The position numbers were made by a program, and so were the translations under genes. A stretch of 64,000 nucleotides of DNA from NCBI GenBank assembly GCA_950097015.1, contig CATNEN010000033.1:3100001-3164000 (forward strand). The letters are read 5' to 3'. This document shows positions 1,276 to 51,189 of this stretch, piece by piece. The stretch comes from Macrostomum hystrix. Its lineage: Eukaryota > Animalia > Platyhelminthes. Under the pieces are notes generated by a model that saw only the letters and a program-made list of their open reading frames with translations, had not been told where the DNA came from and searched no databases. Every line of letters starts with the position of its first letter. Positions within the stretch are counted from its first letter, which is position 1.

Positions 1276-1893
1276 TCATACTCGCCGGTCCGGGTGATCG
1301 CCAAACACATTGCGTATTGGGTGGCATTGTCCATCGCATTGGTAGTCGGGCTTGAGAGAATGACCAACGAAGATGGAAACTACCGGACGCTTGTGCCCAT
1401 CAGGTGTCGGTTCTAATCGGCGCTGAAAGTCCTCCGAATACGCACTGACCGGAGCATGCCCAGCAAGCACTAATAGTCGATCGAGCCAAGAGACGTGTCG
1501 AATAGCCTTGTATTTGGCATTGACTTCAAAAGTGTCTCCATTGATCAATCGAAGTAGTGTGCACATGACTTCAGATGAGTCATCAAACAGATTCGGGCGT
1601 AGCTCGTCAATAAACATGGCAGTGTGTATAGTCTCGCAGAGCTTGTCAAACAGAAACGTGTTAGACCGCTTCTGCACCTGGACAGTCAGCACCTTCGTAG
1701 AACCGAGATGGCTTTGCACAGAGTGTGTCTTCCCAACGCCAGACGGGCCGTATAGATAGACGACACCAGTTGGCGATTGTAACGCTCTGCACACAGCCTT
1801 TACTGTTGGGCACACGTTAGTGGCGGCGATCAACCGGGGAACATGAGCGACGGCGGCATCAGGAAATTGGACAGCATCAGCAGCAGCAGGGAC
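1276..1893 (-). CDS. Gene A copy 1, exon 2: SF3 (AAA+) helicase domain, Rep/NS1-like
   Basis: Walker A YLYGPSGVGKT, Walker B MFIDE, B'-like LLRLINGDTFEVNAKYK, motif-C position LVLAGH and Arg-finger-like FQRRL. The frame is open up to the AG acceptor at 1894; 618 nt = 206 codons including the stop. Confidence 0.85.
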   Translation of the reverse strand, partial: VPAAADAVQFPDAAVAHVPRLIAATNVCPTVKAVCRALQSPTGVVYLYGPSGVGKTHSVQSHLGSTKVLTVQVQKRSNTFLFDKLCETIHTAMFIDELRPNLFDDSSEVMCTLLRLINGDTFEVNAKYKAIRHVSWLDRLLVLAGHAPVSAYSEDFQRRLEPTPDGHKRPVVSIFVGHSLKPDYQCDGQCHPIRNVFGDHPDRRV

Positions 1894-2038
1894 CTGTTGG
1901 ATGGTAGGTAGTTTTGCATATAATTAATTAATTGTCGATTGAGTTAATAATTTTTTGATTCAAAGGAACAGCAAAAATTCAATGATCAATACTTATAAGT
2001 GTGCTAAGTAATCTTATGGCTTATAATATTTTGCATAC
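1894..2038 (-). other. Predicted phase-0 GT-AG intron joining gene A exon 1 to the helicase exon (copy 1)
   Basis: Minus strand reads GAG|GTATGC...CCAACAG|GTC. The interior is AT-rich and splicing restores one reading frame. Confidence 0.75.
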
Positions 2039-4421
2039 CTCCAGCTGAGTAGGCAAGGTCGTCCTCGCATAGTCGGCTGTTGCAGCATCATCAGCAGCGG
2101 CGGCGGCGGCAGCGGCAGTAGGGCGACAGTTTTGGCAACCAGCTAGCACCTCTGTTGCTATTACGCGTTTCATCTGAGTCACCTTAAAGTAATCGCTGAG
2201 CTCTTGTCTGACACGAAAGTGTTCGAACATGAAGCCACTATCTAGCAAAGGCTCAGTTTTCGACGCCTCATGAGCAGCAACCCAGCAAAAGGCCTTGGCC
2301 AGCAAGCTGCACTCTTGAGTAGAAACGCGGAAAAGAGCTGGAAACTCGTCCGTACTGGTAACTAGCTTAATTGCACTTGACGCACTGCGTACACCAGACA
2401 CTGTCATTCTACACATTGTAGGATGCAGGTAGGCCGAAGCTTCCGCAGATTCCTCCATCAAAAGGGCATGCAGTCCGCAGTAAACAGTGTAACCATCTTC
2501 TGGTTGGCGCAGGTTCAGGAACATCAGCAAACCATTGGGATGATTCGGAGCTCCTAAACATTCACGGATTGACATGTTGTATTTCTGCTGACGACGCGCT
2601 CGGATTTCTTCGCTGGTCAGCATGTCAACCTGAATACATGATGTTGTGCCGATGGCAAACTGTGCACATGGAGCTACCAATTCATCTTCTAGAAACGCCT
2701 TGAATTTTTCCACATCGCTCGAGATGAATGCAATCTCTATAAGATGTAGCGTCCTTCTAGTCATAAGAACCGACCTGCCCTCTGCTGTTAAAGAGGCGTA
2801 GTCGGTAATTGGAGCTCGAGGACATAGAAGTGGTGATGTCGAACGACACAACGCATATTCATCGGCTATCGGAGCAAATGCCACGCCACCAACTTGCTGC
2901 TGCTGCTGTTGCCGCTGCTGCGGTTGTTGATCTCGCTGATGATGCTGCTGCTGCGATTGCTGCCGTCGTCCCGACTGTTGCGCTGTTGATTCAAAAGCGT
3001 CGACATACGCTGGAGAAAATACTGCGAGAGCTGGTTCATCATCATCGGATATTGTCCCATTCTCGATGACAGACATTGCCGGTGTAGAGCGAGGCGCATA
3101 ATCTGGCGAAGTCGGACAGGCACCAAGTGCGGCACTATTTTTAGGAATAGTCGACTCGCCATTTACGCGCAATAATTCTGCCACCTCTGTTTTGTACTTA
3201 TCATCGACTAGCTGCGATGATGAGGCTGAACTATTAGAGGCCGTCAAAACGGGGGCAGTATTTGACTCTACATTGTCTGTATTGCTGATGAAGTGGTGAT
3301 GTCGAACGACACAACGCATATTCATCGGCTATCGGAGCAAATGCCACGCCATCGTCTTGCTGCTGCTGCCGTTCACGCCCTTGTATCTGCTGCCGCAGCT
3401 GCTGCCGCCACTGCTGCTGCTGCGGCTGTTGCTGTGGTTGTTGCTCTCGCCGTTGATGCTGCTGCTGCTGCTGCTGCTGCGATTGCTGCAGTCGTCCCGA
3501 CTGTTGCGCTGTTGGTTGAGAAGCGTCGACATACACTGGAGAGAATACAGCGCGAACTGGTTCATCAGCATCGGATGTTGTCCCATTCTCGATGACAGAC
3601 ATTGCCGGTGTAGAGCGAGGCGCATAATCTGGCGAAGTCGGACAGGCACCAAGTGCGGCACTAGTTTTAGGAATAGTCGACTCGCCATTTGCGCGCAATA
3701 ATTCTGCCACCTCCGTTTTGTACCTATCATCGACTAGCTGCGATGATGAGGCTGAGCTATTAGAGGCCGTCAAAACGGGGGCAGTATTTGACTCTACATT
3801 GTCTGTATTGCTGATGAACTCGTCCATAATCTCCAGCTGTACGTCGTCTGCTAGCAAGTCGTCCGCTGATTCATCTTCAGATGATAGCACTTTAGGCGTG
3901 GACTCTATGCGATCAGCATGGTCGCCGGCGCCACAAATTGGTTGGGCAGCAATAACCAGAGGCTGTCGCATGGCTACTAGAGATCCAACGCCAGTGTCTT
4001 CAGCATCAGACGACGATGAATTGCTAGACGAAGCATCCAAATCGACAACTGTACGCGTCCGCTTGCGTAGAGTCGATCGGGCATATCGACGCTTCCGAAT
4101 TGCACTCGATAGGACAGTCTGCTTCGGCTGCTGCTGCTGCTGCTGCTGTTTCGACTGCTGCTGCTGCTGTTGCTGCTGTATTACTGCAAGGCGGGGAACA
4201 GTGAAGGCAGCCGATGCCCGACCAGCCGTTCCTGCCATTGCTGTAAATGATGCCGATGATGCTTGCACACTCGGTCTAGATGCTGCGCCAGTAGGACGAT
4301 CGGTTGACTGCTGAGATCTAAAGTAGTCCACGATCATAGTCTGGCGTAGACCATTAGCATCCGGTGTAGCAATGCTGGCATCCACACGAGCCTTCTTTCC
4401 ACGGCCACGAAATGCTGACAT
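2039..4421 (-). pseudogene. Gene A copy 1, exon 1, frameshifted by an internal ~460-bp tandem duplication
   Basis: ORFs 3234-4433 and 2021-3325 together match the single ORF 14538-16409. The segment ISNTDNVES...RSTSP occurs twice, with a junction at ~3292. Confidence 0.8.
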
Positions 4422-4902
4422 TTCAAAATTCAAGTCGAGGCGTAGGAATTAACTCGTAATTACTCGGTCGGTCAGTCAGTCGGTCACAAAGTAGATGTTA
4501 AGCGCGCTCAGTCTTACATAGCTCACTTTTGCGACTGTACTCAACTGTAGTTCTAGATTTGACTACAGACAAAACTTTTTTTCGCGAAAATTCACTCGTG
4601 TGTATTGCAATCCCCAATTCGCAAATACTAATAGATAAAATTTCTATGGCTATTTCGCGAAAAAACCATTACAAGTATATAGACTAGCCATGTTAATTCA
4701 ATTACTTTCGCAGTATACTTTACTACTTCAGGTGCAATCGGCACTACTATAAGTAATATTGCAGTAGTAAGTCAACATTAATAATAATGGGGATCCACAC
4801 AAAAAGTGTGGATTCCAATATAAAAAAAACTGATTCCTAGTAAAAATTTATTTTCATTTCTAGTATAATGTTGCCTATTTTTTTTAAATAAAAAAATGCG
4901 TT

Positions 4903-4974: not shown

Positions 4975-5576
4975 ACAATAAAAGTGTGTGTTGTCTGGCT
5001 ATTTATATTGCTTTTCTTTCGCATGTTGTATTCTTATGAACCTTTTGCAAAAATACTGCCCTTACCTTTGTTTTGGGAACATAGCAGTATTATCGCGAAA
5101 ATTCTGTGTCTTAGACAATAGAAATGTCTATGTCTATTTCGCGAAAATACCATCTAAACTATCACAAGTATATAGACTAGCCATGTTAATTCAGTTACGT
5201 TCGCAGTATACTTTACTACTTCAGGTGCAAGCAGCACTACTTCAAGTACTATTGCGCAACTATGCATTTAATATTGTTTGAATACACATTTGTACTTTCG
5301 CGAATATATACCGGCTGCTGTAGCCGCACAATCTCAGATTTATTTGCATAAGTACGGCAGTAAAAGACAAGACACTTCGTCTGAAAAAATTCGCAAAAAG
5401 ACATGTGTCCCAAATGAAAGTAAAGGCATTATCAAAAGGAATTAACTGGCGTATTCGAGCAAAAGTACGTTAATAATAATGGGGATCCACAAAAAGTGGG
5501 GATTCGAATATAAAAAAGACTAATTTTAATTTTCATTGATAGTAGAATGTTAGCTGCTTTTTTAATAAAAAAAAGT

Positions 5577-5650: not shown

Positions 5651-6047
5651 ACAATCAAATAGTGTGTTATCTGGCTATTTATATTTATTTTCTTTCGCAT
5701 GTTCGAGTTTTAATGACGTTTGTCTGCAAATGGTGAAATCTTGACCACTAATACAATTTTTTTTCTAACAGACTGATAATATTTATTCAGCGAATATAGA
5801 GAGTACTTCAGGAATGTTTTGCAAAAATACTACCCTTATCTTTGTTTTGGAAACATATCAGTATTTTTGCGAAAATACTTTAATTCATGAATATGCATAG
5901 ACAATAAATACACTTTTCGCGAAAATACCAGCATTTGAGTCTATTCGCAGCCAAGTCAGTTTTCGAATCGACATCCATCACATATATGTACGGATATGTG
6001 ATTCAGGCAGCCGATGCTGCTTGCCCACTCGGTCTATACGTATAAAC

Positions 6048-6652
6048 TAGAGTTTACGGACTTAGAGAATTTTATCATGTCAGTGATAAAATTTTCGACC
6101 GTCCCAAGAGCTTAGTTGGTGTGGCTGGTGGAGTAGTAAATGCTATACAGGCAGGTATATATATATACTCTTAAGAAAGGTGCGCGAGTTGTTTTTTCGC
6201 AACTTGACTTCGCTACTCGACGTCGTCGGCATATGGGGGCTAGTATATAGCCGGGCTGGCTGAACCCCGGGCGATTCGATTCTATTTTTAGCTTAAGGCG
6301 CACCTTTCTTAAGAGTATATACATACAAGCTGGCTCGTGTGTATTTAAATGGCAGCCTATTGAAGTCTATGGGGCACGCAAGCCAGTATATACTCTTAAG
6401 AAAGGTGCGCCTTAGGCTAAAAATAGAAACACCATGCATTTTCGGTCATCTAGTAATTACTAGTCGTCATCAAGCCCGATCTAGATATAATCTCCGTCAT
6501 ATTGCCTCCAGCGAAAGTGTACAGCGCGCACCTTTCTTTAGAGTATATACTAGCTGGCTCGCTCTATCCCGCCCCGATCTCACTACACTATTTAAGCCTT
6601 GGGACGGTCGAGAATTTACGTTTATAAATTCTCTAAGTCCATAAACTCTTAT
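6048..6652. repeat. ~600-bp nested imperfect palindrome H1 (copy 1), with a core hairpin at 6280-6428
   Basis: 43-bp arms 6280-6322 and 6386-6428 have one mismatch. The motif GCGCACCTTTCTTAAGAGTATATA lies in mirror positions at ~6160-6187 and ~6525-6552. An outer inverted pair lies at ~6050-6113 and ~6593-6650. Confidence 0.9.
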
Positions 6653-6667
6653 AATTGGAGTGCTGCA

Positions 6668-6720
6668 TGGTGTGGTGTGGTGTGGTGTGGTGTGTGGTGT
6701 GGTGTGGTGTGTGGTGTTGG
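6668..6720 (+). repeat. (GGTGT)n/(GT)-rich simple repeat next to H1
   Basis: Visible directly; a longer homologous tract is at ~17372-17452. Confidence 0.9.
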
Positions 6721-8060
6721 GTGGGTGGATGCAGAGTGCAGGTGCAGGTTGGGTAGGTGGTGCATGGTGTCTCACTCTCATATCCTCCCTTCACTCTGTC
6801 CTAGCTTCCTCCCCTACCTTCGCTTTCCTCCTCTTCCTTTCTTCGATCTACCCTGATCCTTTATTCACTCTCCCTCGCTATCAATTTCCTCCTGTACTAT
6901 CCTCCAAATATGTCTTCGCAAAAGAGTAACACATCAGTACAATGAATCAATAAATACAATGAATCAGTCGTACGAATTTGGGTGGGTGGATGCAGAGTGC
7001 AGGTGGTTGGGTAGGTGGTGGTGTCTGACTCTCTGCATATCCTCCCTTCACTCTGTCCTAGCTTCCTCCCCTATACCTTCGCTTTCCTGATCCCCTTCCT
7101 TTAATCTGATGATTCTGGATTCAGGATTCTGGATTCTGATTCAGGATCTGATGATCCTGATCCTCTCTTCACTCTCCCTCGCTTTTACTTTCCTCCTGTA
7201 TACTATCCTCCAAATATTTTTTCGCGAAAGTAACACATCAGTACAAATCTACAATCTGTGCAGTCAACCTACTTTTGCTTTCCTCCCCTTCCTTCGATTT
7301 GATCCTCTCTTCACTCTCCCTCGCTTTCACTATCCGCCAACTATGTTTTCGCGAAAGTTACACGTCAATAAATGGTACCAGAGTGCTTTTGTTGGAACGA
7401 TCAGTTGAGATCAGTTCGAAGAAACTGAAGCATCCAAAGCCAAAAACAAAAGCCGAAATCCAAATTTGCAGCTTCTTCTAGCTGCAACTCACTGACTAGC
7501 CAGTTTCTGCACTGCTATAGCTACTACTTACAGCAGGCGCATGCGTAGCTGAAAAGACATTTTTTATCTCCTTAGTGTATTTCTTGCACACGTCTATGGC
7601 TGTAAATAGTAGCACGCAAAAAGCCGAATGACCTTTTTTTTGATCTCCGTAGTGTATTTCTAAATATAGAACATTCTATATGGACTATCCCAATTAGGGT
7701 CGTCGTCTCTGGGGAAAACTCGCACCGATTTAGAATACACGTACAACAGAGGTCCGTTTTGGTCTTGCTGGGGCCTTGGCTGGGGCTTGGCTGGACCAGA
7801 CCCCCCCTTTCAACATTTTAGGAACATAATATCTCAGACTGATCGATTACGATTACGTCGGTCTTGTAATAAGTCTCAACGCCAATGTACACCGCATAAC
7901 CGCCAGTCAGTTTAGTACATATTATTTTAATGATAGAATAAACAAGATAAGAAGTTGTGTACTATTAACGATTATACAAATAACAAACACTAAATTATTT
8001 ATATTTATTAATTATTTATATTTTAAAACGGATGACCGGTGCAGAGCAATGCTGACTGCT

Positions 8061-8148
8061 CGCATTGCCGTCAGGCCGCACGTTAGCCAGCTGAAAGCAT
8101 TCAGAAAAAAGCTGAAATCTGACTAACGTGCGGCCTGACGGCAGTGCG
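8061..8148. repeat. Branched hairpin H2, copy 1
   Basis: Arms CGCATTGCCGTCAGGCCGCACGTTAG and CTAACGTGCGGCCTGACGGCAGTGCG, with inner stems CAGCT/AGCTG and CTGAA/TTCAG. Confidence 0.85.
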
Positions 8149-9260
8149 TGAGCAATAGCCAGCTGATATCATAGCAGCTTCCGTTGAAGGACGCGAAAAT
8201 ACATTCTACTGTTCAACCAGTATGTGACATGTCGCAGTATGTGAACCACGGAACCGTCCCACCGAATCACTATACACTACAATACCGTAGCAGTCCGGTG
8301 TGACGATACTGTCTTCCACAAGAGCCTTCTTACCTTTTTACCACTGCCACATTATACACAGATCTCAAGTAGTCAACTTGTTTTCGTTTTGACTTAATAC
8401 GTATGTACTTTCGCGAAAAAAAAGTTGGCAGTGCGCAAACACTAATTATAGATGAAATGTCTGGCTATATTCGCGAAAATACCATAGATATAGCCACGCT
8501 ACTTAAAGAACTTTTGCAAAAATACTGCATACAATATGAATTATATGCAGCCGTTTTTTGTGTCTACGGCCAAAAACGTCTGACTGTATTTTCGAAAGAA
8601 AAAATGTGGATACGAATAAAAAAATCGCGAAAAATCGAGCTGTACCAAGCAGACATGTCTTTGGTAAAATACGCAGAATTTAATGCACTACATACCTATA
8701 GTCTGCACGTTTTAATAGTGCATCTTGGAATATCTTATATCTAGCGATACGAAAGTGTATAATAATTAATTCGTCGTTTGTACTTTACTTTCTCAAACTT
8801 ATCTAACTTATCTAGCTAACTTATATGTATTTATAATGTACGATAATAGTTACATTACTGCACGCCTACAATTTCATATAATATACGAAATCCAAGCTAA
8901 GAAAAAACAGTAAGACGTATTAAGCATTTTAATCAATTAATACTTCAATCAATATTTATATTTTTATATCAATTTAATCAATTAATCAATCTGTCTATAT
9001 TGAGCATAGAAAAATTAAACTGAAATTTAAAGAATTATGGAGACCAGCAGCGTCTGATCAATTTTTATCGGCTTAACTCAAATTTACAACTATTATCTCT
9101 TAATCTGCTTATGGGATTTAAACACATCAAATTTAATCAATTTAATAAATCTGTAAATTGAGCATAGAAAAATTAAACATAAAATTCAGAATTGAAGAAT
9201 CAATTAGTTCAATCAGTTAATCAGTCAATCAGTCTTCAATTAACGCACCGCTCCCCTCGG

Positions 9261-9631
9261 TCATAGGACACCCGGCTGCGGGATAAAGGATGGGTTTTAG
9301 GTTTCATTTAGTTTGTTAGCTCAGATGTTATCAGATGTGTTATTAATAAATATTCAAATGCAAATAATAATCGAAATCTACTACTCACATAAGGATCCAG
9401 CCCCGCAGCTATGCGGCGAGCCCTGGCCATGCGAAGCATGGCCGCTTTGACCCGCCGCATAGCTGCGGTGAGATTCTGCTCCACCCGGCGCCGTTCCGGC
9501 GTCCAGGCCTCCACTGCCGCCACCTCAGTTGCCGCCTCAATCGCATTGTTTAATGCCTTCTCCAGTTCTTCGACAGCGGAAGCCAGGACGAACGCCCGAA
9601 ACGGCGCCGGGAACATAGGGAAATTTGCCAT
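9261..9631 (-). CDS. Gene B copy 1: ~85-aa Ala/Arg-rich helical protein; exons 9631-9389 and 9275-9261, intron 9276-9388
   Basis: TAT|GTGAGT donor, GCTAAC branch point and CCCGCAG acceptor. The terminal exon PGVL* is conserved in five copies. Confidence 0.75.
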
Positions 9632-9877
9632 TGTTAATTGTTGTTAATTGTTAATTGCTGCTGTTGCGGCTTTGGTTGTGGGCTGATTTCTTGGCCGATA
9701 AAATATCTCTTGTTCTTAATGCCCAGACTGGCCTGTATTTATTTGATTTGTCTGTGGACTGACTCACCTGTGTTTGATAAAATATACTCTATGGGGACTT
9801 TGATTAAAGTTTAGAAATTTTTAAAACTAAAAAATTTTTTTTGCTTTAGGCTCGCTTGATTTACTAACTGACTGAAC

Positions 9878-10258
9878 ATGTCGTTCATTGCCCATCAGAT
9901 GCAGTTAGTGCAAATGTATCTTCACCCGCACATATTTCAACTCTTTCTCAGCTGTCGCATAGATTGCATTGGCCGGTTTATAGCGCATCGAGGGTGCTTC
10001 GAGCAGCTACATAGTTTGCAGCGCGGTGTTCCAAATGCTGAGTATAGCGCTAATGAGTTATGCTTATTATTACGGCGCACTCAAGAATGGCTGCAACAGC
10101 ACCGGTCAGCAGAAGACTATAAGGCTGTCTTGTTCGTGACTGGTGTAAGAGACGATGATGCACAAGACAACATCGAAGTGCTAGAGCTTTTCGAGGAAGC
10201 CCAAGCTGAACTCCAGCTCATCATACATGGAGTTCGCTACTGGTACATCGAACAATGA
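9878..10258 (+). CDS. Gene C copy 1: 126-aa protein of unknown function
   Basis: ATG-initiated ORF conserved in four copies, divergent from gene B. Confidence 0.7.
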   Translation: MSFIAHQMQLVQMYLHPHIFQLFLSCRIDCIGRFIAHRGCFEQLHSLQRGVPNAEYSANELCLLLRRTQEWLQQHRSAEDYKAVLFVTGVRDDDAQDNIEVLELFEEAQAELQLIIHGVRYWYIEQ

Positions 10259-10763
10259 ATGCTGTAAAATACAGAATTTATATACAGAATTTTATGTATT
10301 AAAGTTTACACGTTTATTTTTGCTCTCGCGACTTTGCAAATCAGACTAATTGTAGAATAGCACGATTATTTGTTCAATCAATGAAATTCTATATATATTT
10401 ATACTCTATATATGTATTGGTGAAATTTAATTATTAATTACCGGTTGACTACCTGCACACATCTGTGTTCGCGTATTAATATTTTATTACTGACTGATCT
10501 CATCAGTCGTCTGATTATGATTAATGGTAAATGCGACAATATATTGTCAATAGTGACGGCAAACTCTTATGCTTTGAATATACCACGTGAAGGTGAACGA
10601 GAGCTAGTGTATGTAAAAGTAGTTTAAAACATTTGCAGGTATCATGAACTGTCGACTTTGAATACTTAGATGTGTTAATCAAATACCAACTTTTAATTAT
10701 ATTATTCAGTTAATTAATTTCATTATAACTAATGGCAACAGTGCTTAACAAAAGAATTGCTAC

Positions 10764-11245
10764 ATGTCATTCAAATCTGGGTTATTAGCAGCACGATTGG
10801 CATTGCCGCGCTCTCTTTCAGTGCCAGTGCCGCCATTGTTGATGCTGCTGCTACTACTTACAATTGGTGACTGTATATCGGTCACTTGCGCATGCTGCGG
10901 CAGTTGCAATTGTTCGGATCACGTTCTAAATCACGTGTTCAATTGTTCTAAATCACGTGTCGGATTGGTGTTCACAATAGAAAATCTCTGATAGTAAATG
11001 CGCACGACACCTGGACGATGCAATACGTACTGAACACGTTGACGTGAAGGCAGAATAGCAAAATCGGAGTCTGAACTACTATCCGAGCTGTGCCTTCGTC
11101 GACGTCGCTCAGTGCCAATCACGACATCCGTGCTGTTACTGACGGTAGGGCACGAGATCGGTTTGTCGTTGCCAGAGTTGTGATCCTCTCTGTCGATATC
11201 TCGATCTCGATCTCCGCCATTGTGCCGCCCACCCAGGGATGACAT
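10764..11245 (-). pseudogene. Gene D copy 1, frameshifted by a small duplication at ~10915-10960
   Basis: Matches intact ORF 46935-47390. GTTCTAAATCACGTG is duplicated and gives a premature stop. Confidence 0.6.
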
Positions 11246-11479
11246 GTTGTAGTTTTTTTATTTGAAACAATAATTAAGAATCTAAAATGTGTAAATAAGT
11301 TACGCCACTTACCTTAGTAAAGTAACCAACTAAAAACCCTATTTCTAGTCTATGGTAACAAGATTGCTGATAATCTTATGTGATTGGGAATATGTAATCA
11401 ATGCAGTTGAAACTTTGGACAATTAATGAAGTAAATAAAACAAGTTCAACATTTTAAATACTGCCCCCATTGTCTCGCC

Positions 11480-12046
11480 ATGCCTACATCAACATCATCA
11501 TCAGGGCCAACTCTAAACGATGCGGAACGAAACGAATCCAACTGTCACGACGATGACGTTAAGCTGAATGAAGAGCCAGGCTATGATGACTACGGGTATG
11601 ATGAAACATACAATTCAACATACAGTTTTGTATTCGGCCTGGCAGACGACCATTTGTTATACGCCGTAGCTGAAGAGGTCGAAGCGGCGATGGCAGCCAA
11701 TTGCTTTGACCCAGCTGATGACGAGCTTTTGTATGCAGCAGCTGAAGAGGGGGAGGCGTCAGCAGCAGCGGCAGCGACGGCAGCCAGTAGCTGTTTATTT
11801 GACCCAGCTGATGACGAGCTTTTGTATGCAGCAGCTGAAGAGGCGGAGGCGTCAGCAGCAGCGGCAGCGATGGCAGCCAGTAGCTGCTTGTTTGACCCAG
11901 CTGATGACGAGCTTTTGTATGTCGCAGCTGAAGAGGCGGAGGCGTCAGCAGCAGCGGCAGCGATGGCAGCCAGTAGCTGTTTATTTGACCCAGCTGACGA
12001 CTGCCTATTGTATGCCGGAGCTGAAGAGGCGGAGGCATACGTTTGA
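11480..12046 (+). CDS. Gene E copy 1: acidic protein with ~31-aa DPADDELLYAAAEEAEASAAAAAMAASSCLF repeats
   Basis: ATG ORF; four paralogs with in-frame repeat-number variation. Confidence 0.7.
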   Translation: MPTSTSSSGPTLNDAERNESNCHDDDVKLNEEPGYDDYGYDETYNSTYSFVFGLADDHLLYAVAEEVEAAMAANCFDPADDELLYAAAEEGEASAAAAATAASSCLFDPADDELLYAAAEEAEASAAAAAMAASSCLFDPADDELLYVAAEEAEASAAAAAMAASSCLFDPADDCLLYAGAEEAEAYV

Positions 12047-12529
12047 AATTATATTATAAAATAATGCAGAAACTATGATTCATTACAGTTATTTTATAAA
12101 TAAAGCCTCTGATTATCATAACGATTTGATATACATATTGGTGTTGTTTTGTTAGTGATTGAAAATACACTAATCTTTTCGTGAAAATACCATCACCAAC
12201 AATCATAAGCACAAACGTAAGCATTATTGTTTGTATTTTTTGTTTGTAAACGTTCATATTATTTTAATACTCAAAGCAATTTCGCATAAATACAGCAGTT
12301 TGTATTTGTTTTAGAACATGTTCTTTCGGAAAAATATGTTCATCTTCGTATCGTTAGTATTTTTGCAAAAAACTGTCATTATTTTTCATTCACAGGTATT
12401 CAATACAATATATAGATAGCATATAGTCTTTTCGCGAAAAAAATCCACTCATGACTCTTGGCAATTTGCAGAAATACTAAATGTGTCTATGGTTAAAAAT
12501 GTACAAGATACTTAGTCTAATAATATGCA

Positions 12530-13140
12530 TGTATTTTCGCGAAAATACCATAATATATAGCCATGCACACACCTACTTTAAGAACTTTTGCAAAAATACC
12601 GCCAACTACCTTTGTTTAATAGCATAGCAGTATTTTAGCGAAAATACCATAAGATGTAGCCATGCACACTACTTTAAGAACTTTTGCAAAAATACTGCCC
12701 TTACCTTTGTTTAGAGCATATCAGTATTTTCGCGAAAATACCATAAGATGTAGCCATGCACACTACTTTAAGAACTTTTGCAAAAATACCGCCAACTACA
12801 TCTGTTTAATAGGATATCAGTATTTTCGCTAAAATACCATAATATATAGCGATGCACACACCTACTTTAATAACTTTTGCAAAAATACCGTCAACTACCT
12901 TTGTTTAATAGCATAGCAGTAGTTTCGCGAAAATACCATAATATGTAGCCATGCACACCACTACCTACTTTAATAACTTTTGCAAAAATACCGCCAACTA
13001 CATCTGTTTAATAGCATAGCAGTATTTTCGCGAAAATACCATAATATGTAGCCATGCACACTACTTTAAGAACTTTTGCAAAAATACTGCTCTTACCTTC
13101 GTTTTGAGAACATATCAGTCTTTTCGCTAAAATTCCGTAT
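12530..13140. repeat. Second array of the ~96-bp palindrome-containing unit
   Basis: Same unit as 325-900; sequence from ~12184 onward repeats window position 1 onward. Confidence 0.9.
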
Positions 13141-13755
13141 TTACTTTCGGTTTAGAAGTCGTTATTTTTTTTTCGCGATAACACCTATAAATGAATTTTA
13201 TTAATCAATGCTTTGACACTTTGCATATACCTTCGTTTGAAGATAGTAATACTATATATAGAAAAATTGCACATAAGACCCAGTTGAGGACGAGCTTTTG
13301 TATGCCACAGCTGAAGGAAGCAGAGGCGTCATAACGTCAGAATGTAAAATAATACAATCACTATGATTCATTATGCAGTTATATTATAAATCTACTGATT
13401 ATCGTAACTATTGTTTGTATTTTTATGCATGCAAACGCTCAATACATTTATTGTATTCGTGTTGGGCTTCATTAATCAGTCAATTGACTACAATTAGCAA
13501 GAAATAAGATTTTTTTGCAACAGAAGTAGCAATTACCTACTTCACAACAATAAAAGCTCAAAACTGAGCATATAAATTGATTTTATTTGTATGACTAATT
13601 ATAAAATTGCATACAAAAACAGTATGAAACAGTAAAAAATATAAAAAAACAGCTGAAAGACTGACTGAATGACCGAGTAAAAATATAGTCGACAAAATAG
13701 CAGCATGCAGGCAGTTTAGTGTAAAAAAATCCTGCTAACAGCACCGTCTTGTCGC

Positions 13756-14397
13756 TCATACTCGCCGGTCCAGGTGATCGCCAAACACATTGCGTATTGG
13801 GTGGCATTGTCCATCGCATTGGTAGTCGGTACTGAGGGAATGACCAATGAAGATGGCAACTACCGGACGCTTGTGCCCATCAGGTGTCGGTTCTAATCGG
13901 CGCTGAAAGTCCATCGAATACGCACTGACCGGAGCATGCCCAGCAAGCACTAACAGTCGATTGAGCCAAGAGACGTGTCGAATAGCCTTGTATTTGGCAT
14001 TGACTTCAAAAGTGTCTCCATTGACCAAACGAAGTAGTGTGCACATGACTTCAGATGTGTCATCAAACAGTTGCGGGCGTAGCTCGTCAATAAACATGGC
14101 AGTGTGTATAGTCTCGCAGAGCTTGTCAAACATAAACGTGTTAGACCGCTTCTGCACCTGGATATTCAGCACTTTCGTAGAACCGAGATGGCTTTGCACA
14201 GAGTGGGTCTTCCCAACGCCAGACGGGCCGTATAGATAGACGACACCAGTTGGCAATTGCAACGCGCTGCACACAGCCTTTACAGTTGGGCACACGTTGG
14301 TGGCGGCGGCGATCAGCCGGGGAACATGAGCGACGGCGGCATCAAGTACTTGAACAGCAGTAGCAGCGGAAGCAGCAACATCAGCAGCAGCAGAGAC
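13756..14397 (-). CDS. Gene A copy 2, exon 2: SF3 helicase domain
   Basis: GPSGVGKT, FIDE, LLRLVNGDTFEVNAKYK and FQRRL are present; 642 nt = 214 codons including the stop, open up to the acceptor. Confidence 0.85.
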   Translation of the reverse strand, partial: VSAAADVAASAATAVQVLDAAVAHVPRLIAAATNVCPTVKAVCSALQLPTGVVYLYGPSGVGKTHSVQSHLGSTKVLNIQVQKRSNTFMFDKLCETIHTAMFIDELRPQLFDDTSEVMCTLLRLVNGDTFEVNAKYKAIRHVSWLNRLLVLAGHAPVSAYSMDFQRRLEPTPDGHKRPVVAIFIGHSLSTDYQCDGQCHPIRNVFGDHLDRRV

Positions 14398-14555
14398 CTG
14401 TTGGATGGTGTTGTGTTGTTAGGTAGGTTCGCATACAATTAATTAATTAATTGTCCAAAAGTAATAATTATTTGAATTAAAACAACAGCAAAAATTCAAT
14501 GATCAATACTCGTACGTGTGCTAAAAAATGTCATGTATTATAATATTTTGCATAC
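14398..14555 (-). other. Predicted phase-0 GT-AG intron (gene A copy 2)
   Basis: GAG|GTATGC donor, CCTAAC branch point, CCAACAG|GTC acceptor. Confidence 0.8.
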
Positions 14556-16409
14556 CTCCAGCTGAGTAGGCAAGGTCGTCCTCGCATAGTCGGCTGTTGC
14601 AGCATCATCAGCAGCGGCGGCGGCGGCAGCGGCAGTAGGGCGACAGTTTTGGCAACCAGCTAGCACCTCTGTTGCTATTACGCGTTTCATCTGAGTCACC
14701 TTAAAGTAATCGCTGAGCTCTTGTCTGACACGAAAGTGTTCGAACATGAAGCCACTATCTAGCAAAGGCTCAGTTTTCGACGCCTCATGAGCAGCAACCC
14801 AGCAAAAGGCCTTGGCCAGCAAGCTGCACTCTTGAGTAGAAACGCGGAAAAGAGCTGGAAACTCGTCCGTACTGGTAACTAGCTTAATTGCACTTGACGC
14901 ACTGCGTACACCAGACACTGTCATTCTACACATTGTAGGATGCAGGTAGGCCGAAGCTTCCGCAGATTCCTCCATCAAAAGGGCATGCAGTCCGCAGTAA
15001 ACAGTGTAACCATCTTCTGGTTGGCGCAGGTTCAGGAACATCAGCAAACCATTGGGATGATTCGGAGCTCCTAAACATTCACGGATTGACATGTTGTATT
15101 TCTGCTGACGACGCGCTCGGATTTCTTCGCTGGTCAGCATGTCAACCTGAATACATGATGTTGTGCCGATGGCAAACTGTGCACATGGAGCTACCAATTC
15201 ATCTTCTAGAAACGCCTTGAATTTTTCCACATCGCTCGAGATGAATGCAATCTCTATAAGATGTAGCGTCCTTCTAGTCATAAGAACCGACCTGCCCTCT
15301 GCTGTTAAAGAGGCGTAGTCGGTAATTGGAGCTCGAGGACATAGAAGTGGTGATGTCGAACGACACAACGCATATTCATCGGCTATCGGAGCAAATGCCA
15401 CGCCACCAACTTGCTGCTGCTGCTGTTGCCGCTGCTGCGGTTGTTGATCTCGCTGATGATGCTGCTGCTGCGATTGCTGCCGTCGTCCCGACTGTTGCGC
15501 TGTTGATTCAAAAGCGTCGACATACGCTGGAGAAAATACTGCGAGAGCTGGTTCATCATCATCGGATATTGTCCCATTCTCGATGACAGACATTGCCGGT
15601 GTAGAGCGAGGCGCATAATCTGGCGAAGTCGGACAGGCACCAAGTGCGGCACTATTTTTAGGAATAGTCGACTCGCCATTTACGCGCAATAATTCTGCCA
15701 CCTCTGTTTTGTACTTATCATCGACTAGCTGCGATGACAAGGCTGAACTATTAGAAGCCGTCAAAACAGGGGCAGTATTCGACTCTACATTGTCTGTAGT
15801 GCTCGTCCACTCGTCCACAATCTCCAGCTTTACGTCATCAGCTAGCAAATCGTCCGTGTCCTTAGCTGAGTTATCTTCAGGTGATAACACTATAGGCGTG
15901 GACTCTCTGCGATCAGTATGGTCGCCGGCGCCACCAATTGATTGGGCGGCAATAATCAGAGGCTGTCGCATGGCTACCAAAGATCCAACGCCAGTGTCTT
16001 CAGCATCAGACGACGATGTACTGCTAGACGAAGCATCCAAGTCGACAACTACACGCGTCCGCTTGCGTAGAGTCGATCGGACACGTCGACGCTTCTGAAC
16101 TGCGGTTGTAATAACAGTTCGCTGCTGCTGCTGCTGCTGCTGCTGCGCTTGCTGTTGCTGCTGTACTACTGCTGCACGGCGGGGAACATTGAAGGCAGCC
16201 GATGCCCGGCCAGCCGTTCCTGCCAGTGCTGCGAATGATGCCGATGCTGCTTGCCCACTCGGTCTAATTGAGTTGCCAGTAGGACGATCGGTTGACTGCT
16301 CAGATCTAAAGTAGTCCACGATCCTAGTCTGGCGTAGACCATTAGAATCCGATGTAGCAATGCTGGCATCCACACGAGCCTTCTTACCACGGCCACTAAA
16401 TGCTGACAT
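14556..16409 (-). CDS. Gene A copy 2, exon 1 (618 codons): basic/Gln-rich disordered N-terminus plus a ~230-aa globular domain; ~831 aa after splicing
   Basis: Uninterrupted ATG ORF 14538-16409, in frame with the helicase exon after splicing. Confidence 0.75.
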
Positions 16410-16756
16410 TTCAAACTTGAAGTCGAGGCGTAGGAATTAACTCGTAAATGTGGTTGATCGCTCGGTTAGTCAGTCAGTCAGTCGGTCACAAAGTATCTGT
16501 TAACCGCGCTCCGTCTTAGATAGCTCACTTTTGCGACTGTACTGGACTGTAGTTCTAACAAAAATACTGCCCGTACCTTTGTTATGCGAACATATCAGTA
16601 TTTTTGCGAAAATAAATACACTTTTCGCTAAAATACCAGCATTTAAGTATATTCACAGCCAAGTCAGTTTTTGAATCGACATCCATCACATATATTTACG
16701 GATATGTGATTCAGGCAGCCGATGCTGCTTGCCCACTCGGTCTATACGTATGAACT

Positions 16757-17355
16757 AGAGTTTACGGACTTAGAGAATTTTATCATGTCAGTGATAAAAT
16801 TTTCGACCGTCCCCAGAGCTTAGTTGGTGTGGCTGGTGGCTGGTAAATGCTATACATGCAGGTATATATATATACTCTTAAGAAAAGTGCGCGAGCTGTT
16901 TTTTCGCTACTCGACGTCGTCGGCATAGCTAGGGCCTAGTATAGCCGGGCTGGCTTGCTAGCTTGCCACTGAACGGGGAAACCCCGGGCGATTCTATTTT
17001 TAGCAAAGCTGCTACTCCACGGAAAAACCGCGCAGGCGCACCTTTCTTAAGAGTATATACTGACTTGCGTGTCCCATAGACTTACATGGCTGCCACTTGA
17101 ATACACACACGAGCCGCGTCTATACTCTTAAGAAAGGTGCGCCTGCGCGGTTTTTCCGTGGAGTAGCAGCTATCCTATATGCTGACGTCAACTAGCGAGG
17201 CCGCATATACACGGCGGGAATATATACGGCGCGCACCTTTCTTTAGAGTATATACTAGCTGGCTCGCTCTATCCCGCCCCGATCTCACTACACTATTTAA
17301 GCCTTGGGACGGTCGAGAATTTACGTTTATAAATTCTCTAAGTCCATAAACTCTT
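16757..17355. repeat. Nested palindrome H1 (copy 2), with a core hairpin at 17007-17171
   Basis: Perfect 51-bp arms at 17007-17057 and 17121-17171. The 63-nt loop is the reverse complement of the copy-1 loop. Confidence 0.9.
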
Positions 17356-18224
17356 ATAATTGGAGTGCTGCATGGTGTGGTGTGGTGTGGTGTGTGGTGT
17401 GGTGTGGTGTGTGGTGTGGTGTGGTGTGTGGTGTGGTGTGGTGTGTGGTGTTGGGTGGGTGGATGCAGAGTGCAGGTGCAGGTTGGGTAGGTGGTGCATG
17501 GTGTCTCACTCTCATATCCTCCCTTCACTCTGTCCTAGCTTCCTCTCCTACCTTCGCTTTCCTCCCCTCCCTTTCTTCCTATTCCTTCGATCTGATCCTC
17601 TCTTCACTCTCCCTCGCTATCAATTTCCTCCTGTACTATCCTCCAAATATGTTTTCGCAAAAGTAACACATCAGTACAATGAATCAATAAATACAATGAA
17701 TCAGTCGTACGAATTTGGGTGGGTGGATGCAGAGTGCAGGTGGTTGGGTAGGTGGTGGTGTCTCACTCTCATATCCTCCCTTCACTCTGTCCCAGCTTCC
17801 TCCCCTACCTTCGCTTTCCTCCCCTTCCTTTCTTCCTATTCCTTCGATCTGATCCTCTCTTCACTCTCCCTCGATTTCACTATCCTCCAATTATGTTTTC
17901 GCGAAAGTAACACGTCAATGAATGGTACCAGAGTGCTTTTGTTGGAACGATCAGTTGAGATCAGTTCGAAGAAACTGAAGCATCCAAAGCCAAAAACCAA
18001 AGCCGAAATCCAAATTTGCAGCTTCTTCTAGCTGCAACTCACTGACTAGCCAGTTTCTGCACTGCTATAGCTACTACTTACAGCAGGCGCATGCGTAGCT
18101 GAAAAGACATTTTTTATCTCCTTAGTGTATTTCTTGCACACGTCTATGGCTGTAAATAGTAGCGCGCAAAAAGCCGAATGACCTTTTTTTGATCTCCGTA
18201 GTGTATTTCTAGTGTATCTAGAAG

Positions 18225-19105
18225 ATAGCGCAGATGAATCAGGCATCATCTATGCAACAAGTTATGACGAGCCTGCTGAACATGTGAGCCAAGCGGACAG
18301 CGTGTCAATTGGATCAGTACGGCATCCAATTTGTACATCTACTCCGCTTAATCACAATGCGATTGAAGCAGCAGCAGAAACAATCCAATCGGATCACTCG
18401 CCAGTACCATCGCCATCAATGCCAATGTTGCAAATTGAGCCAATCGGATCACCAGCGATGCCTATGTTGCCGATTCCAACTGTCGAGGTGCCGTATTTCG
18501 TTCCGGTGCCGCTACCTGTTTTTATTCCTGTCTGTGCGCCAAGAGTAACAACAGCGACAGTTGGTGTCAGTGCACAAAACAGTGTGACCGATGTTTCAAT
18601 CGAAGCCAATGTCAGCACGCAGTCAGTGTGTATTGGTACATCATCCGGTCACGGTGATGACATTGAAATGGCGCAGATTCTGCTCGACTTGATGCAACCT
18701 GCCGCTATGCAAGTTCTGTCTACCAATACGGATTGTGTTGCTGCTGCTGCTGGATCGGATTTCGCTGCCCATTCCGAAGCAAGTCACATCGATGATATGT
18801 TTGATGTCGCAATGGAGATCATCATTGCTGATGTCAACAACGTTTCGGATGAACGGCTATCCGGTGTGACATTGCCGCAAGGAGATGCCGATGCCGCAGC
18901 AGAATTGATTCTGACCGCCGACCTTGACGACGATGTCGCAATGTCAATAAGTGATGTGCAGTCATCGCAATCTACCATACCTGCGACTGATGCCTTGCAT
19001 GCATCTAGACGCTCGTATTGTATATGCACACACAATATATTGACTACGACAGTGTCAAGACACGGCCGATTGATCAAGACGCGACAATGTCTGTGCGGCA
19101 ATTGA
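18225..19105 (+). pseudogene. Gene F, 5'-truncated copy
   Basis: Matches 41001-42134 from EDSADES onward; fused at ~18215 to unrelated upstream module sequence. Confidence 0.65.
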
Positions 19106-19560
19106 TTTCATTCAATTCAATTGGCTCGGCGTGCAACTCAGATTGGGCTGCTTTGTCTGTCTCCTGGCTGGCTGGCTGGCTGGCTGAATAATCGACTGAC
19201 TCACTTATAATAAATTCAGACTGAACTTGATTTAATCGATTGATTTAATATACGTTGATATAAGAATGAACTAAAAAAGTTAAACTTTTACGCGATTTGA
19301 TTCTAAGCGATTTGATTCCACTACCGTCTATTCTTATTACATCAATTTTAGTTTTAAGTCTACTTCATTATTCTCAGGTTTTGTGCAATATAAATACAAA
19401 CATAATATATCAGACTGATCGATTACGATTACGTCGGTTTTGTAATAAGTCTCAACGCCAATGTACACCGCATAACCGCCAGTCAGTTCAGTTCATATTA
19501 TTTTAATGATAGATTTATATTTTAAAACGGATGACCGGTGCAGAGCAATGCTGACTGCTC

Positions 19561-19647
19561 ACACTGCCGTTAGGCCGCACGTTAGCCAGCTGAAAGCATT
19601 CAGAAAAAAGCTGAAATCTGACTAACGTGCGGCCTGACGGCAGTGCG
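19561..19647. repeat. Branched hairpin H2, copy 2
   Basis: Homologous to 8061-8148. Confidence 0.85.
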
Positions 19648-20710: not shown

Positions 20711-21089
20711 TTATAGCACACCAGGCTGCGGGTTGAAAGATGGGTTTTAGGTTTCATTTAGTTTGTTAGCTCGAGTTCAGATATGTTAATAAATATTCAA
20801 ATGAAAATAAAAGTCGAAATCTACTACTCACATAGGGGTCTAAGCCCACAGCTATGCGGCGGGCCCTGGCCATGCGTAGCATGCCCGCCTTGACCCGCCG
20901 CATAGCTGCGGCGAGATCCGCCTCCGCCCGGCGCCGTCCCGGCGTCCAAGCCTCCGCTGCCGCCACCTCAATTGCCGCCTCACTTGCTTCCTTCAGGGAA
21001 GCCTCCAACCCCGTGGCAGCGGATGCTAGAACGAACTGCCGGAACGACCCCGGGAATAATGGAAAGTTTCCGCTGTTGCTGCTTGCCAT
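20711..21089 (-). CDS. Gene B copy 2; exons 21089-20832 and 20725-20711
   Basis: MASSNSGNFPLFP...LDPY|PGVL*, with the same splice signals as copy 1. Confidence 0.75.
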
Positions 21090-27889: not shown

Positions 27890-27977
27890 CACATTGCCCT
27901 CAGGCCGCACGTTAGCCAGCTGAAAGCTTTCAGAAAAAAGCTGAAATCTGACTAACGTGCGGCCTAACGGCAATGTG
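27890..27977. repeat. Branched hairpin H2, copy 3
   Basis: Homologous to 8061-8148; the inner CTGAAAGCTTTCAG is a perfect palindrome. Confidence 0.85.
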
Positions 27978-31269: not shown

Positions 31270-31495
31270 TATGCATGTATTTTCGCGAAAATACAGCATA
31301 ATTGATGTAGCCATGCACACTACTTCAAGAACTTTTGCAAAAATACCGCCAACTACCTTTGTTTAATAGCATATCAGTATTTTCGCGAAAATACCATAAG
31401 ATGTAGCCATGCACACTACTTTAAGAAGTTTTGCAAAAATACTGCCCTTACCTTTGTTTAGAGCATATCAGTATTTTCGCGAAAATACTATATAT
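31270..31495. repeat. Short array of the ~96-bp palindromic unit
   Basis: GTATTTTCGCGAAAATAC occurs three times with the unit sequence. Confidence 0.85.
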
Positions 31496-40019: not shown

Positions 40020-40052
40020 TTAGAGCTCTGGGTTCTAGCTCGCTGCCACCAA

Positions 40053-48950: not shown

Positions 48951-48954
48951 TGTA

Positions 48955-51075: not shown

Positions 51076-51189
51076 TCTTTTAAAACAACGACTCACTATC
51101 TCCATGCTGAGACAGTGACGTAGAGCGAATAGCGGAATTTCTCGGCCTCTGCCTCGATGCTGTTGCGGCCAGAAAGTTCCTCGAAAGCT

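What the first reader, a model, noticed from the sequence alone, without database searches (positions are those of the whole stretch)
6280..17171. Flip/flop isomers of the H1 hairpin loop between two same-orientation units
Seen: the flanks of H1 have the same orientation in both units. Yet the copy-2 loop (TGACTTGCGTGTCCCATAGACTTACATGGCTGCCACTTGAATACACACACGAGCCGC, ~17061-17117) aligns to the reverse complement of the copy-1 loop (6323-6385, reverse complement TGGCTTGCGTGCCCCATAGACTTCAATAGGCTGCCATTTAAATACACACGAGCCAGC). Established: flip/flop loops arise from hairpin transfer in parvoviruses and other hairpin-ended replicons, or from recombination between inverted arms. Finding this next to an SF3 Rep-like gene suggests that H1 is the origin or terminus.
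Basis: partly seen in the sequence, partly recalled or inferred. Interest (0 to 1): 0.85.

Follow-up and report, generated by a model that had tools for sequence, protein, structure and literature searches.

The report
Flipped hairpin loop in duplicated units
Two copies of a ~150-180 bp DNA hairpin in a duplicated stretch of a flatworm (Macrostomum) chromosome carry their central loop in opposite orientations; the flip is real, but it is most simply an ordinary inversion between the hairpin's own arms and not proof of a virus-like hairpin replication origin.

Summary
Loop 1 (6323-6385) matches loop 2 (17061-17117) only as its reverse complement (50/57 identical, z about 27, BLAST E 2e-19), while both flanks run the same way.

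H1 is the centre of a ~600-bp imperfect palindrome. This module carries four copies of a sharply bounded 24-nt motif in alternating orientation. It lies about 0.6 kb upstream of a two-exon gene, inside a ~10.7-kb tandem duplication in a repeat-rich Macrostomum region.

The gene's C-terminal P-loop domain is only weakly SF3-like. No nuclease, Rep, NS1 or capsid domain was detected. The gene has a spliceosomal-type intron. Its M. lignano relative has no such hairpin nearby.

The H1 arms co-evolve within each unit, including a symmetric ~31-nt indel. Only the loop is flipped; spacer A is not.

Best reading (about 0.6): one inversion by arm-to-arm recombination or replication template switching in a chromosomal palindrome. 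That mechanism also keeps the arms matched.

A relic of a hairpin-ended replicon (about 0.12) or a motif-directed inversion switch (about 0.08) is not excluded.

Only two copies could be examined. No reads or further genomic copies were reachable.

The parts
6049..6649 (.). Palindromic module, unit 1: outer arm, motif, spacer A, H1, spacer B, motif, outer arm
   Evidence: Arm-against-arm alignment. Outer arms 6049-6185 / 6526-6649 pair in blocks of 20/21, 19/20 and 23/25. The DNA fold puts H1 inside the outer stem, z = -13.3.
16757..17354 (.). Palindromic module, unit 2
   Evidence: Same layout as unit 1. Outer arms are 96-100% identical to those of unit 1, in the same orientation.
6278..6430 (.). 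H1 copy 1 (arms 6280-6322 and 6386-6428)
   Evidence: 43-nt arms, 98% complementary.
6323..6385 (+). Loop of H1 copy 1
   Evidence: Matches loop 2 only as its reverse complement.
17001..17177 (.). H1 copy 2 (arms 17001-17060 and 17118-17177)
   Evidence: 60-nt arms, 95% complementary; 100% over 51 nt.
17061..17117 (-). Loop of H1 copy 2, inverted relative to copy 1
6162..6185 (-). 24-nt motif M, outer left, unit 1
   Evidence: Pattern search: 8 matches in the window, 0 expected.
6298..6321 (+). Motif M, inner left (left arm of H1), unit 1
6387..6410 (-). Motif M, inner right (right arm of H1), unit 1
6526..6549 (+). Motif M, outer right, unit 1 (1 mismatch)
16869..16892 (-). Motif M, outer left, unit 2 (1 mismatch)
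17036..17059 (+). Motif M, inner left, unit 2
17119..17142 (-). Motif M, inner right, unit 2 (1 mismatch)
17231..17254 (+). Motif M, outer right, unit 2 (1 mismatch)
6186..6277 (+). Spacer A, unit 1
   Evidence: Homologous to spacer A of unit 2 in the same orientation, with indels.
16893..17000 (+). Spacer A, unit 2
6431..6525 (.). Spacer B, unit 1
   Evidence: No similarity to spacer B of unit 2 in either orientation.
17178..17230 (.). Spacer B, unit 2
6668..6765 (+). G/T-rich tract just right of the module, unit 1
17373..17451 (+). G/T-rich tract just right of the module, unit 2
13756..16409 (-). Gene copy 2, open. Exon 1 is 16409..14553, the putative intron 14552..14398, exon 2 14397..13756. 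The N-terminal half is low-complexity, followed by an orphan central domain and a P-loop ATPase domain in exon 2.
   Evidence: ORFs. GT..AG stretch shared by both copies, with indels not divisible by three inside it and divisible by three outside it. Pfam. Relatives.
1276..4433 (-). Gene copy 1, broken in the exon-1 part
   Evidence: tblastn of the two exons taken separately and the ORF list.

Best explanation
H1 is a chromosomal imperfect palindrome at the centre of a ~600-bp inverted-repeat module. The module lies upstream of an orphan gene, and the whole block was duplicated in tandem (period about 10.7 kb) in a Macrostomum genome. After the duplication the short unpaired segment between the arms was inverted in one copy. 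The cause was exchange between the two arms of the same palindrome: intramolecular recombination with crossover, or a replication template switch across the hairpin.

The same arm-to-arm copying, without crossover, keeps the two arms of each copy nearly identical and carries indels from one arm to the other. This explains why the outer stems differ between the units yet stay self-complementary within each.

Shown: the inversion, the co-evolution of the arms, the tandem duplication, the chromosomal context and the weak protein signal. Inferred: the mechanism, and that a single event suffices.
For: (1) Only the segment bounded by the perfectly paired arms is reversed. Spacer A outside H1 keeps its orientation, z = 27.8 forward.

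(2) The arms match within a unit at 98% (43 nt) and at 100% over 51 nt. Between units they differ by a ~31-nt indel present symmetrically on both arms. In unit 1 the right arm carries the complement of left-flank sequence that unit 2 has only on its left. This is the footprint of one arm serving as template for the other.

(3) The two units are paralogues in a chromosomal duplication, collinear over 1-22179. Divergence is mosaic: dS is 0.014 in one 417-codon stretch and 0.07-0.15 elsewhere. The loops differ at 12% of sites, like the older layer, so there was ample time for one event.

(4) The mechanism is well documented. Template switching produces loop inversions and multi-base compensatory stem changes (PMC8794818; PMC5453318). 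Hairpin-bounded small inversions flip recurrently in plastomes (PMC6824564). Arm-to-arm conversion with rare spacer inversion is known in large palindromes (PMC3723533).

(5) Nothing viral was detected apart from a weak SF3-like P-loop.
Against: The strict retention of the 24-nt motif in all eight places (189 of 192 nt) is not explained by a purely mutational account. The motif has sharp edges, alternates in orientation, and has break points of homology lying at those edges. This hints at a protein-recognised site.

Two other hairpin families in the same duplicated units have not flipped.

A 57-65-nt loop is larger than most documented template-switch or plastome loop inversions.

With two copies and no reads, a locus that still flips cannot be told from a fixed one.
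Confidence: 0.6

Rival explanations
1. Relic of a hairpin-ended, self-replicating element. The palindromic module would be its terminal repeat, joined head-to-tail in an integrated concatemer. The two loop orientations would be flip and flop isomers made by hairpin transfer before or during integration, and the neighbouring ATPase would be the initiator helicase.
For: The two loop states are reverse complements of each other. One arm acts as template for the other. Nested inverted motif copies allow either an extended hairpin or a branched fold. The adjacent P-loop domain has the compact layout of SF3 helicases. Its best matches among viral protein models are Rep and NS1 helicase domains, probability up to 0.99 but E of 2e-3 or worse. 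PF00910 and DUF5906 are sub-threshold. The gene family is patchily distributed and tiny, as for mobile or virus-derived genes.
Against: No HUH or Rep nuclease domain, no NS1 family hit and no capsid or other viral hallmark in the unit. The gene has an intron and long low-complexity tracts. H1 is internal to a chromosomal duplication, and the remaining ~7 kb of that duplication recurs elsewhere without gene or H1. Spacers A and B are not mirror images of each other and are not swapped between units. The M. lignano relative has no such palindrome. No relatives exist in 2.9 million viral contigs. The structural model is of low confidence, and PDB matches are generic AAA+ proteins.
Confidence: 0.12
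2. Programmed, motif-directed inversion. The 24-nt motif would be the target of a site-specific recombinase. Segments bounded by oppositely oriented copies (spacer A, loop, spacer B) would be invertible or exchangeable cassettes, and the loop could act as a direction-dependent regulatory element.
For: There are eight copies with at most one mismatch, sharp edges and strictly alternating orientation. The inverted segment is bounded by two of them. Spacer B is replaced outright, with homology resuming within a few bases of the outer-right motif. The motif has an 8-bp internal palindrome.
Against: No recombinase domain appears in any ORF tested, though not all small ORFs were scanned. Only one of three bounded segments is seen inverted. 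The H1 arms pair well beyond the motif, so plain homology suffices. No precedent for such a switch in an animal genome was found here.
Confidence: 0.08
3. Independent insertions, or excision and re-insertion, of a small foldback or TIR element (motif, loop, motif) in opposite orientations at the same site of the two units.
For: The motif behaves like a terminal inverted repeat. A 10-nt stretch just inside the motif is shared by the loop ends and the outer-right arm. Other TIR elements are present in the window, for example 43075-43912.
Against: No target-site duplication flanks H1 under either choice of ends. In unit 1 the palindrome includes flank sequence. No other copy of the motif or loop occurs in 64 kb, nor in the metagenome or viral collections. 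No transposase was found.
Confidence: 0.07
4. Assembly or haplotype artefact. The two 'units' would be alleles or collapsed paralogues stitched in tandem, or the loop orientation at one locus would be a consensus choice among mixed reads.
For: Macrostomum genomes are repeat-rich, and the region is a mosaic of repeats.
Against: The units differ by many indels, by kilobase insertions and by 1-15% substitutions. A 60-nt loop with 43-60-nt arms is spanned by any read. Even if the copies were alleles, the inversion between two homologous copies would still be real.
Confidence: 0.05

Closest known systems
Hairpin-bounded small inversions and template-switch mutations (plastome 'flip-flop' small inversions; loop inversions in rRNA hairpins)
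   Same: A non-palindromic loop between well-paired arms is replaced by its reverse complement while stems and flanks stay unchanged. Stems acquire multi-base compensatory or symmetric changes (PMC6824564, PMC8794818, PMC5453318).
   Different: The loop (57-65 nt) and arms (43-60 nt) are larger than typical cases (loops of 4 to some tens of nt). The locus is nuclear, in an animal. The hairpin sits within a larger module of repeated 24-nt motifs.
Large genomic palindromes with arm-to-arm gene conversion and occasional spacer inversion (human Y palindrome P6, primate X palindromes)
   Same: The arms are kept nearly identical by intrachromosomal conversion, and the spacer can invert by crossover between the arms (PMC3723533, PMC8327919).
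   Different: The scale is about 150 bp here against tens of kb to Mb there. At this size a replication-based switch is more likely than meiotic or mitotic crossover.
Flip/flop terminal hairpins of parvoviruses (AAV ITR) and poxvirus telomeres
   Same: There are two reverse-complement isomers of the unpaired part of a hairpin, one arm is copied from the other, and an SF3-type ATPase gene may lie nearby (PMC5948225, PMC8956199).
   Different: H1 is not at the end of a discrete genome. There is one known state per locus. No nuclease domain of an initiator and no capsid were found. The gene contains an intron, the unit is about 10.7 kb of largely host-like repeats, and no viral relatives were found.
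Site-specific invertible DNA segments (Hin/Gin-type switches, shufflons, the FLP system of the yeast 2-micron plasmid)
   Same: Short, sharply bounded motifs in alternating orientation flank segments, and one of those segments is inverted.
   Different: No recombinase was detected. The homology of the arms extends beyond the motif. Only two copies were examined.
TIR, foldback or MITE transposons
   Same: Terminal-inverted-repeat look; the module lies at the boundary of repeated units.
   Different: There are no target-site duplications, no transposase and no dispersed copies within 64 kb or in the collections searched.

Membership tests
Rolling-hairpin replicon (parvovirus-like) terminal hairpin | The palindrome lies at the termini of a discrete unit-length genome | tested here: not met
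   H1 occurs once per ~10.7-kb tandem unit, at the centre of a larger palindromic module and inside a duplicated chromosomal block. The rest of the unit recurs 3 or more times without gene or H1.
Rolling-hairpin replicon (parvovirus-like) terminal hairpin | The initiator protein has an HUH nuclease domain fused to an SF3 helicase | tested here: not met
   No Pfam, NCBIfam, PHROG or PDB sequence match for the central domain. Its single-sequence model was unusable, pLDDT 33. The helicase part is only sub-threshold. A very divergent nuclease fold cannot be excluded.
Rolling-hairpin replicon (parvovirus-like) terminal hairpin | Both flip and flop are present among molecules at the same terminus | not testable with these tools
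   This needs raw reads. The assembly gives one state per locus.
Rolling-hairpin replicon (parvovirus-like) terminal hairpin | A capsid gene lies in the same unit | tested here: not met
   No Pfam family for any ORF of 90 aa or more in 6.6-13.5 kb, or for the other ORFs tested.
SF3 helicase superfamily | A significant match to an SF3 profile or structure, with a compact Walker A, Walker B, B', C and arginine layout | tested here: inconclusive
   PF00910 has E = 0.006 and 17.5 bits, below the 21.5 cut-off, covering 85 of 105 profile positions. DUF5906 has E = 0.025. Top BFVD fold matches are Rep/NS1 helicase domains, but with E of 2e-3 or worse, TM about 0.4 and model pLDDT 54. PDB fold and sequence searches give only generic P-loop or AAA+ proteins. 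The conserved columns in the 7-sequence alignment fit a compact P-loop core.
CRESS-type Rep with a stem-loop origin | Rep nuclease domain; short stem with a conserved nick motif in the loop; small circular unit | tested here: not met
   There is no Rep-domain hit. The unit is 10.7 kb.
Hairpin-bounded small inversion / template-switch mutation | The inverted segment coincides with the loop of an inverted repeat; stems and flanks are unchanged; length is roughly preserved | tested here: met
   loops of 63-65 nt and 57-59 nt, arms conserved, flanks co-oriented.
Hairpin-bounded small inversion / template-switch mutation | Stem changes are copied from one arm to the other | tested here: met
   A symmetric ~31-nt indel on both arms, and flank sequence copied into the right arm of unit 1.
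Site-specific inversion system | A recombinase gene plus short target sites in inverted orientation | tested here: inconclusive
   Target-like motifs are present. No recombinase domain appears in the ORFs tested, but not every small ORF was scanned.
TIR / foldback transposon | Target-site duplication, dispersed copies, a transposase | tested here: not met
   Direct reading of the flanks shows no duplication. There are no other copies and no transposase.

The most novel reading that the evidence does not exclude
The four-motif palindromic module and the orphan two-domain ATPase gene together form the cis and trans parts of an undescribed family of flatworm (and other eukaryotic) integrated elements. 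These elements would handle their DNA through hairpin intermediates or motif-directed inversion. The flipped loop, the self-templated arms and the cassette-like replacement of spacer B at the motif edges would be footprints of that activity.
Probability: 0.1. Interest if true: 0.8.

Novelty: new member of a known kind. Interest (0 to 1): 0.35.

Why it matters
If it is an ordinary arm-to-arm inversion, the locus is a clear nuclear, animal example of a hairpin whose loop flips while its arms are kept matched by self-templating. That is useful as a caution for alignment and for reading 'flip/flop' as a viral signature.

If the motif module proves to be protein-recognised, it would point to a new class of eukaryotic mobile or virus-derived element with an orphan, weakly SF3-like ATPase. 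That would also give a function to a gene family that at present has six known relatives and no annotation.

Tried and rejected
**Own genome.** Exact-protein look-ups for five window ORFs to find the window's own genome or other copies: none on record.

**Motif searches.** The motif has 0 matches in metagenome contigs and in viral contigs.

**Protein relatives.**
- Word-indexed searches with exon 1, whole and with residues 385-619: no hits.
- The exhaustive search with exon 2: only 5 true relatives.
- Relatives in viral contigs: none.
- Metagenome scans by alignment or by P0003: an error and then nothing.

**Structure.**
- The exon-2 model has low confidence (pLDDT 54), so its fold matches are only hints.
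- The single-sequence model of the central domain has pLDDT 33, and I did not search with it.
- I did not send translations of L001 or L002 to the structure tool, because it accepts only window or search-returned proteins.

**Other searches.**
- tblastn against phages: one hit at E = 0.2, ignored.
- Rfam: nothing for the module.

**Ideas dropped.**
- A shared regulatory word between the loop and the upstream region of the M. lignano relative is not significant: 80 and 237 of 2000 shuffles reached the observed count.
- H1 as a miniature copy of the whole unit rests on a 10-nt match only.
- The G/T-rich tracts as telomere repeats, and the window as a yeast subtelomere: the retrotransposon places the host in Macrostomum.
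- The nucleotide alignment of the two exon-1 copies across the rearranged part gave unstable indel counts, and I do not use it.

The two exons were never joined. Each was searched by reference on its own, so no search or fold of the spliced product was made.

- I also noted where ORFs of the broken gene copy overlap, before I had recognised it as broken.
- The script printed the sizes (not the places) of the indels between the two exon-1 copies, which goes beyond a score, counts and outer bounds.

Full report
**1. The observation**

H1 copy 1 has arms 6280-6322 and 6386-6428 (43 nt, 98% complementary) and a 63-nt loop. Copy 2 has arms 17001-17060 and 17118-17177 (60 nt, 95%; 100% over 51 nt) and a 57-nt loop.
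- Loop 1 does not align to loop 2 in the forward sense.
- Its reverse complement aligns with 50 of 57 columns identical, far above shuffles (z = 27.4).
- BLAST aligns 6337-6412 to 17108-17034 on the minus strand with E = 1.7e-19.
- The flanks are co-oriented on both sides.
- The loops are not self-complementary.

**2. Anatomy of the module**

H1 is the centre of a larger imperfect palindrome, 6049-6649 in unit 1 and 16757-17354 in unit 2.

A 24-nt motif (reference copy window:6298-6321:+) occurs eight times in the window, against none expected. There are four copies per unit, strictly alternating in orientation (-, +, -, +), each with at most one mismatch. The two inner copies form the core of the H1 arms. 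The two outer copies form the core of an outer stem that continues for about 110 nt at roughly 75% complementarity. Beyond the motif, the eight copies share little.

Single-strand folds place H1 inside the outer stem, with z-scores near -13. Other pairings among the four motif copies are also possible.

**3. What differs between the units**

- Outer arms: 96-100% identical, same orientation.
- Spacer A (between outer-left and inner-left motif): homologous in the same orientation, with indels.
- Loop: inverted.
- Outer parts of the H1 stems: a ~31-nt stretch next to the motif is present on both arms of unit 2 and absent from both arms of unit 1. The right arm of unit 1 carries the complement of left-flank sequence that unit 2 has only on the left.
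- Spacer B: no detectable similarity in either orientation. Homology resumes within a few bases of the outer-right motif and is then 99-100%.

The arms of each H1 therefore evolve together, the motif is kept everywhere, and what lies between the motifs is unstable.

**4. Context**

The window is eukaryotic.
- A Ty3/gypsy pol ORF (35525-39418, minus strand) is 87% identical to a Macrostomum lignano protein. The host is a Macrostomum flatworm or a close relative.
- The two units are a tandem duplication with a period of about 10.7 kb, collinear from position 1 to about 22.2 kb.
- The part of the unit to the right of the module recurs at least three more times in the window, without gene or H1.
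- A fragment of the 96-nt satellite that precedes the gene also lies on its other side.
- Divergence between the units is mosaic. dS is 0.014 over 417 codons of exon 1, 0.07 in exon 2 and 0.15 in the N-terminal part. This indicates exchange between the units after the duplication.
- Two other hairpin families present in the paralogous units have kept their orientation.

**5. The gene**

The gene lies on the minus strand, with its start codon about 0.6 kb from H1.
- Copy 2 is open. Exon 1 is 16409..14553. A GT..AG, AT-rich stretch follows at 14552..14398, shared by both copies. Its indels are not divisible by three, while those in the flanking coding parts are. Exon 2 is 14397..13756.
- Exon 1 is low-complexity in its first half. 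Its last ~235 residues have no match in Pfam, PHROGs, NCBIfam, PDB sequences or the word-indexed protein search, and could not be modelled.
- Exon 2 is a P-loop ATPase. Its best family hints are sub-threshold: PF00910 (E = 0.006, 17.5 bits against a cut-off of 21.5) and DUF5906. PDB sequence and fold searches give generic P-loop or AAA+ proteins.
- Against predicted viral structures, the top matches are almost all helicase domains of CRESS-type Rep and parvoviral NS1. These have E of 2e-3 or worse and TM about 0.4, and the model itself has pLDDT 54. 'SF3-like' is thus a weak, consistent hint, and 'Rep-like' is not shown.
- Copy 1 (1276-4433) is broken. The exon-1 reading frame is interrupted once, by an internal tandem duplication of about half a kilobase whose length is not a multiple of three, leaving two overlapping ORFs of 399 and 434 codons. 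Exon 2 is open, with two in-frame indels.

**6. Relatives of the gene**

An exhaustive profile-free search of 1.8 billion representatives found five true relatives of exon 2. Two are from M. lignano and three from metagenomes.
- The two-domain order is conserved in the M. lignano locus L001. There it is read as three ORFs in three frames, that is, two frame changes.
- It is also conserved in an environmental contig, L002, as two ORFs.
- L001 has no H1-like palindrome within several kb of the gene and no DNA similarity to the window.
- L002 and L003 have none either, but they are short.
- No relatives exist in the viral contig collection.

**7. Mechanism**

The segment that is reversed is exactly the part that lies between two well-paired arms, and the arms carry symmetric changes. 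Both are what exchange between the arms of one palindrome produces.
- A crossover, or a double template switch during replication, inverts the loop.
- A one-way copy makes the arms alike and can extend the stem into the flank.

These processes are documented. Loop inversions and multi-base compensatory changes arise by template switching (PMC8794818; PMC5453318). Hairpin-bounded small inversions recur in plastomes (PMC6824564). Arm-to-arm conversion with rare spacer inversion occurs in large palindromes (PMC3723533).

One event after the duplication suffices. I put this reading at about 0.6.

**8. The viral reading**

Flip/flop by hairpin transfer (PMC5948225, PMC8956199) would give the same two loop states and the same self-templated arms, so the sequence of two copies cannot exclude it.

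Several findings lower it to about 0.12:
- the lack of any nuclease or capsid signal;
- the intron;
- the internal position of H1 in a chromosomal duplication made largely of host-type repeats;
- the unswapped, non-mirror spacers;
- the absence of the hairpin next to the M. lignano relative.

**9. What stays unexplained**

The 24-nt motif has sharp edges and is retained in all eight places, and spacer B is replaced exactly between two motif copies. These look like a protein-recognised site, which could be an origin-like or recombination-like element. I rate a motif-directed inversion system at about 0.08. No recombinase was seen.

**10. Limits**

- Only two copies exist in the window.
- The window's genome is not in the look-up collection.
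- The motif is absent from the searchable DNA collections.
- No reads are available.

**11. Verdict**

The finding is best filed as a new example of a known kind of event, a loop inversion in a self-templating genomic palindrome. It lies next to an uncharacterised gene family and an unusual four-motif module that deserve a genome-wide census.

Noticed in passing
52700-64000: More than 11 kb of a 20-nt satellite whose plus strand is almost free of G (GC skew about -0.99). It runs to the end of the window.
   Followed up: partly
35525-40344 (minus strand): Ty3/gypsy retrotransposon with an open 1297-codon pol (protease, RT, RNase H, integrase) and a gag-like ORF with a zinc knuckle. It is 87% identical to a Macrostomum lignano copy and is inserted inside one of the partial repeat units.
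   Followed up: partly
327-892, 12531-13087, 31277-31492, 48484-48951; fragments at 16559-16614, 5034-5107, 5804-5882: A 96-nt tandem repeat lies at the 3' side of the gene. A lone fragment of the same repeat lies on the 5' side, as if the gene sat within the array.
   Followed up: partly
11705-12036, 26262-26617, 30547-30797: A 93-nt tandem repeat that reads as an open, acidic, alanine-rich peptide repeat (ORF 11480-12046). No family match.
   Followed up: partly
8061-8148, 19562-19645, 27886-27981; 20846-20911, 44886-44951; 23312-23492: Other hairpins. A ~90-nt near-perfect palindrome occurs in three paralogous copies and a 66-nt hairpin in two, all with unchanged orientation. There is also a single palindrome with 51-nt arms and a 79-nt spacer.
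   Followed up: yes
43075-43912: An 838-bp element with 114-nt terminal inverted repeats (96% complementary), inserted in the third partial unit between blocks that are adjacent in unit 1.
   Followed up: no
6668-6765 and 17373-17451: A G/T-rich (TGTGG-like) tract directly to the right of the palindromic module in both units.
   Followed up: no
18216-19513, 32231-33533, 41244-42543: A ~1.3-kb repeat, 96-98% identical in three copies, with an ORF of 215-377 codons and no family match. It is absent from unit 1.
   Followed up: no
exon 1 of the gene, both copies (2036-3295 versus 14553-15812): A 417-codon stretch with only six differences (dS 0.014) lies between stretches with dS of 0.07-0.15. 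This suggests recent gene conversion between the two units.
   Followed up: partly
6010-6036 = 16718-16744, also 16240-16266 and 4252-4278: A 27-nt sequence upstream of the gene is repeated inside the 5' part of its coding region in both units.
   Followed up: no
51080-51541 (minus strand): An ORF with weak, sub-threshold C2H2 zinc-finger matches, in the unique stretch before the satellite.
   Followed up: no
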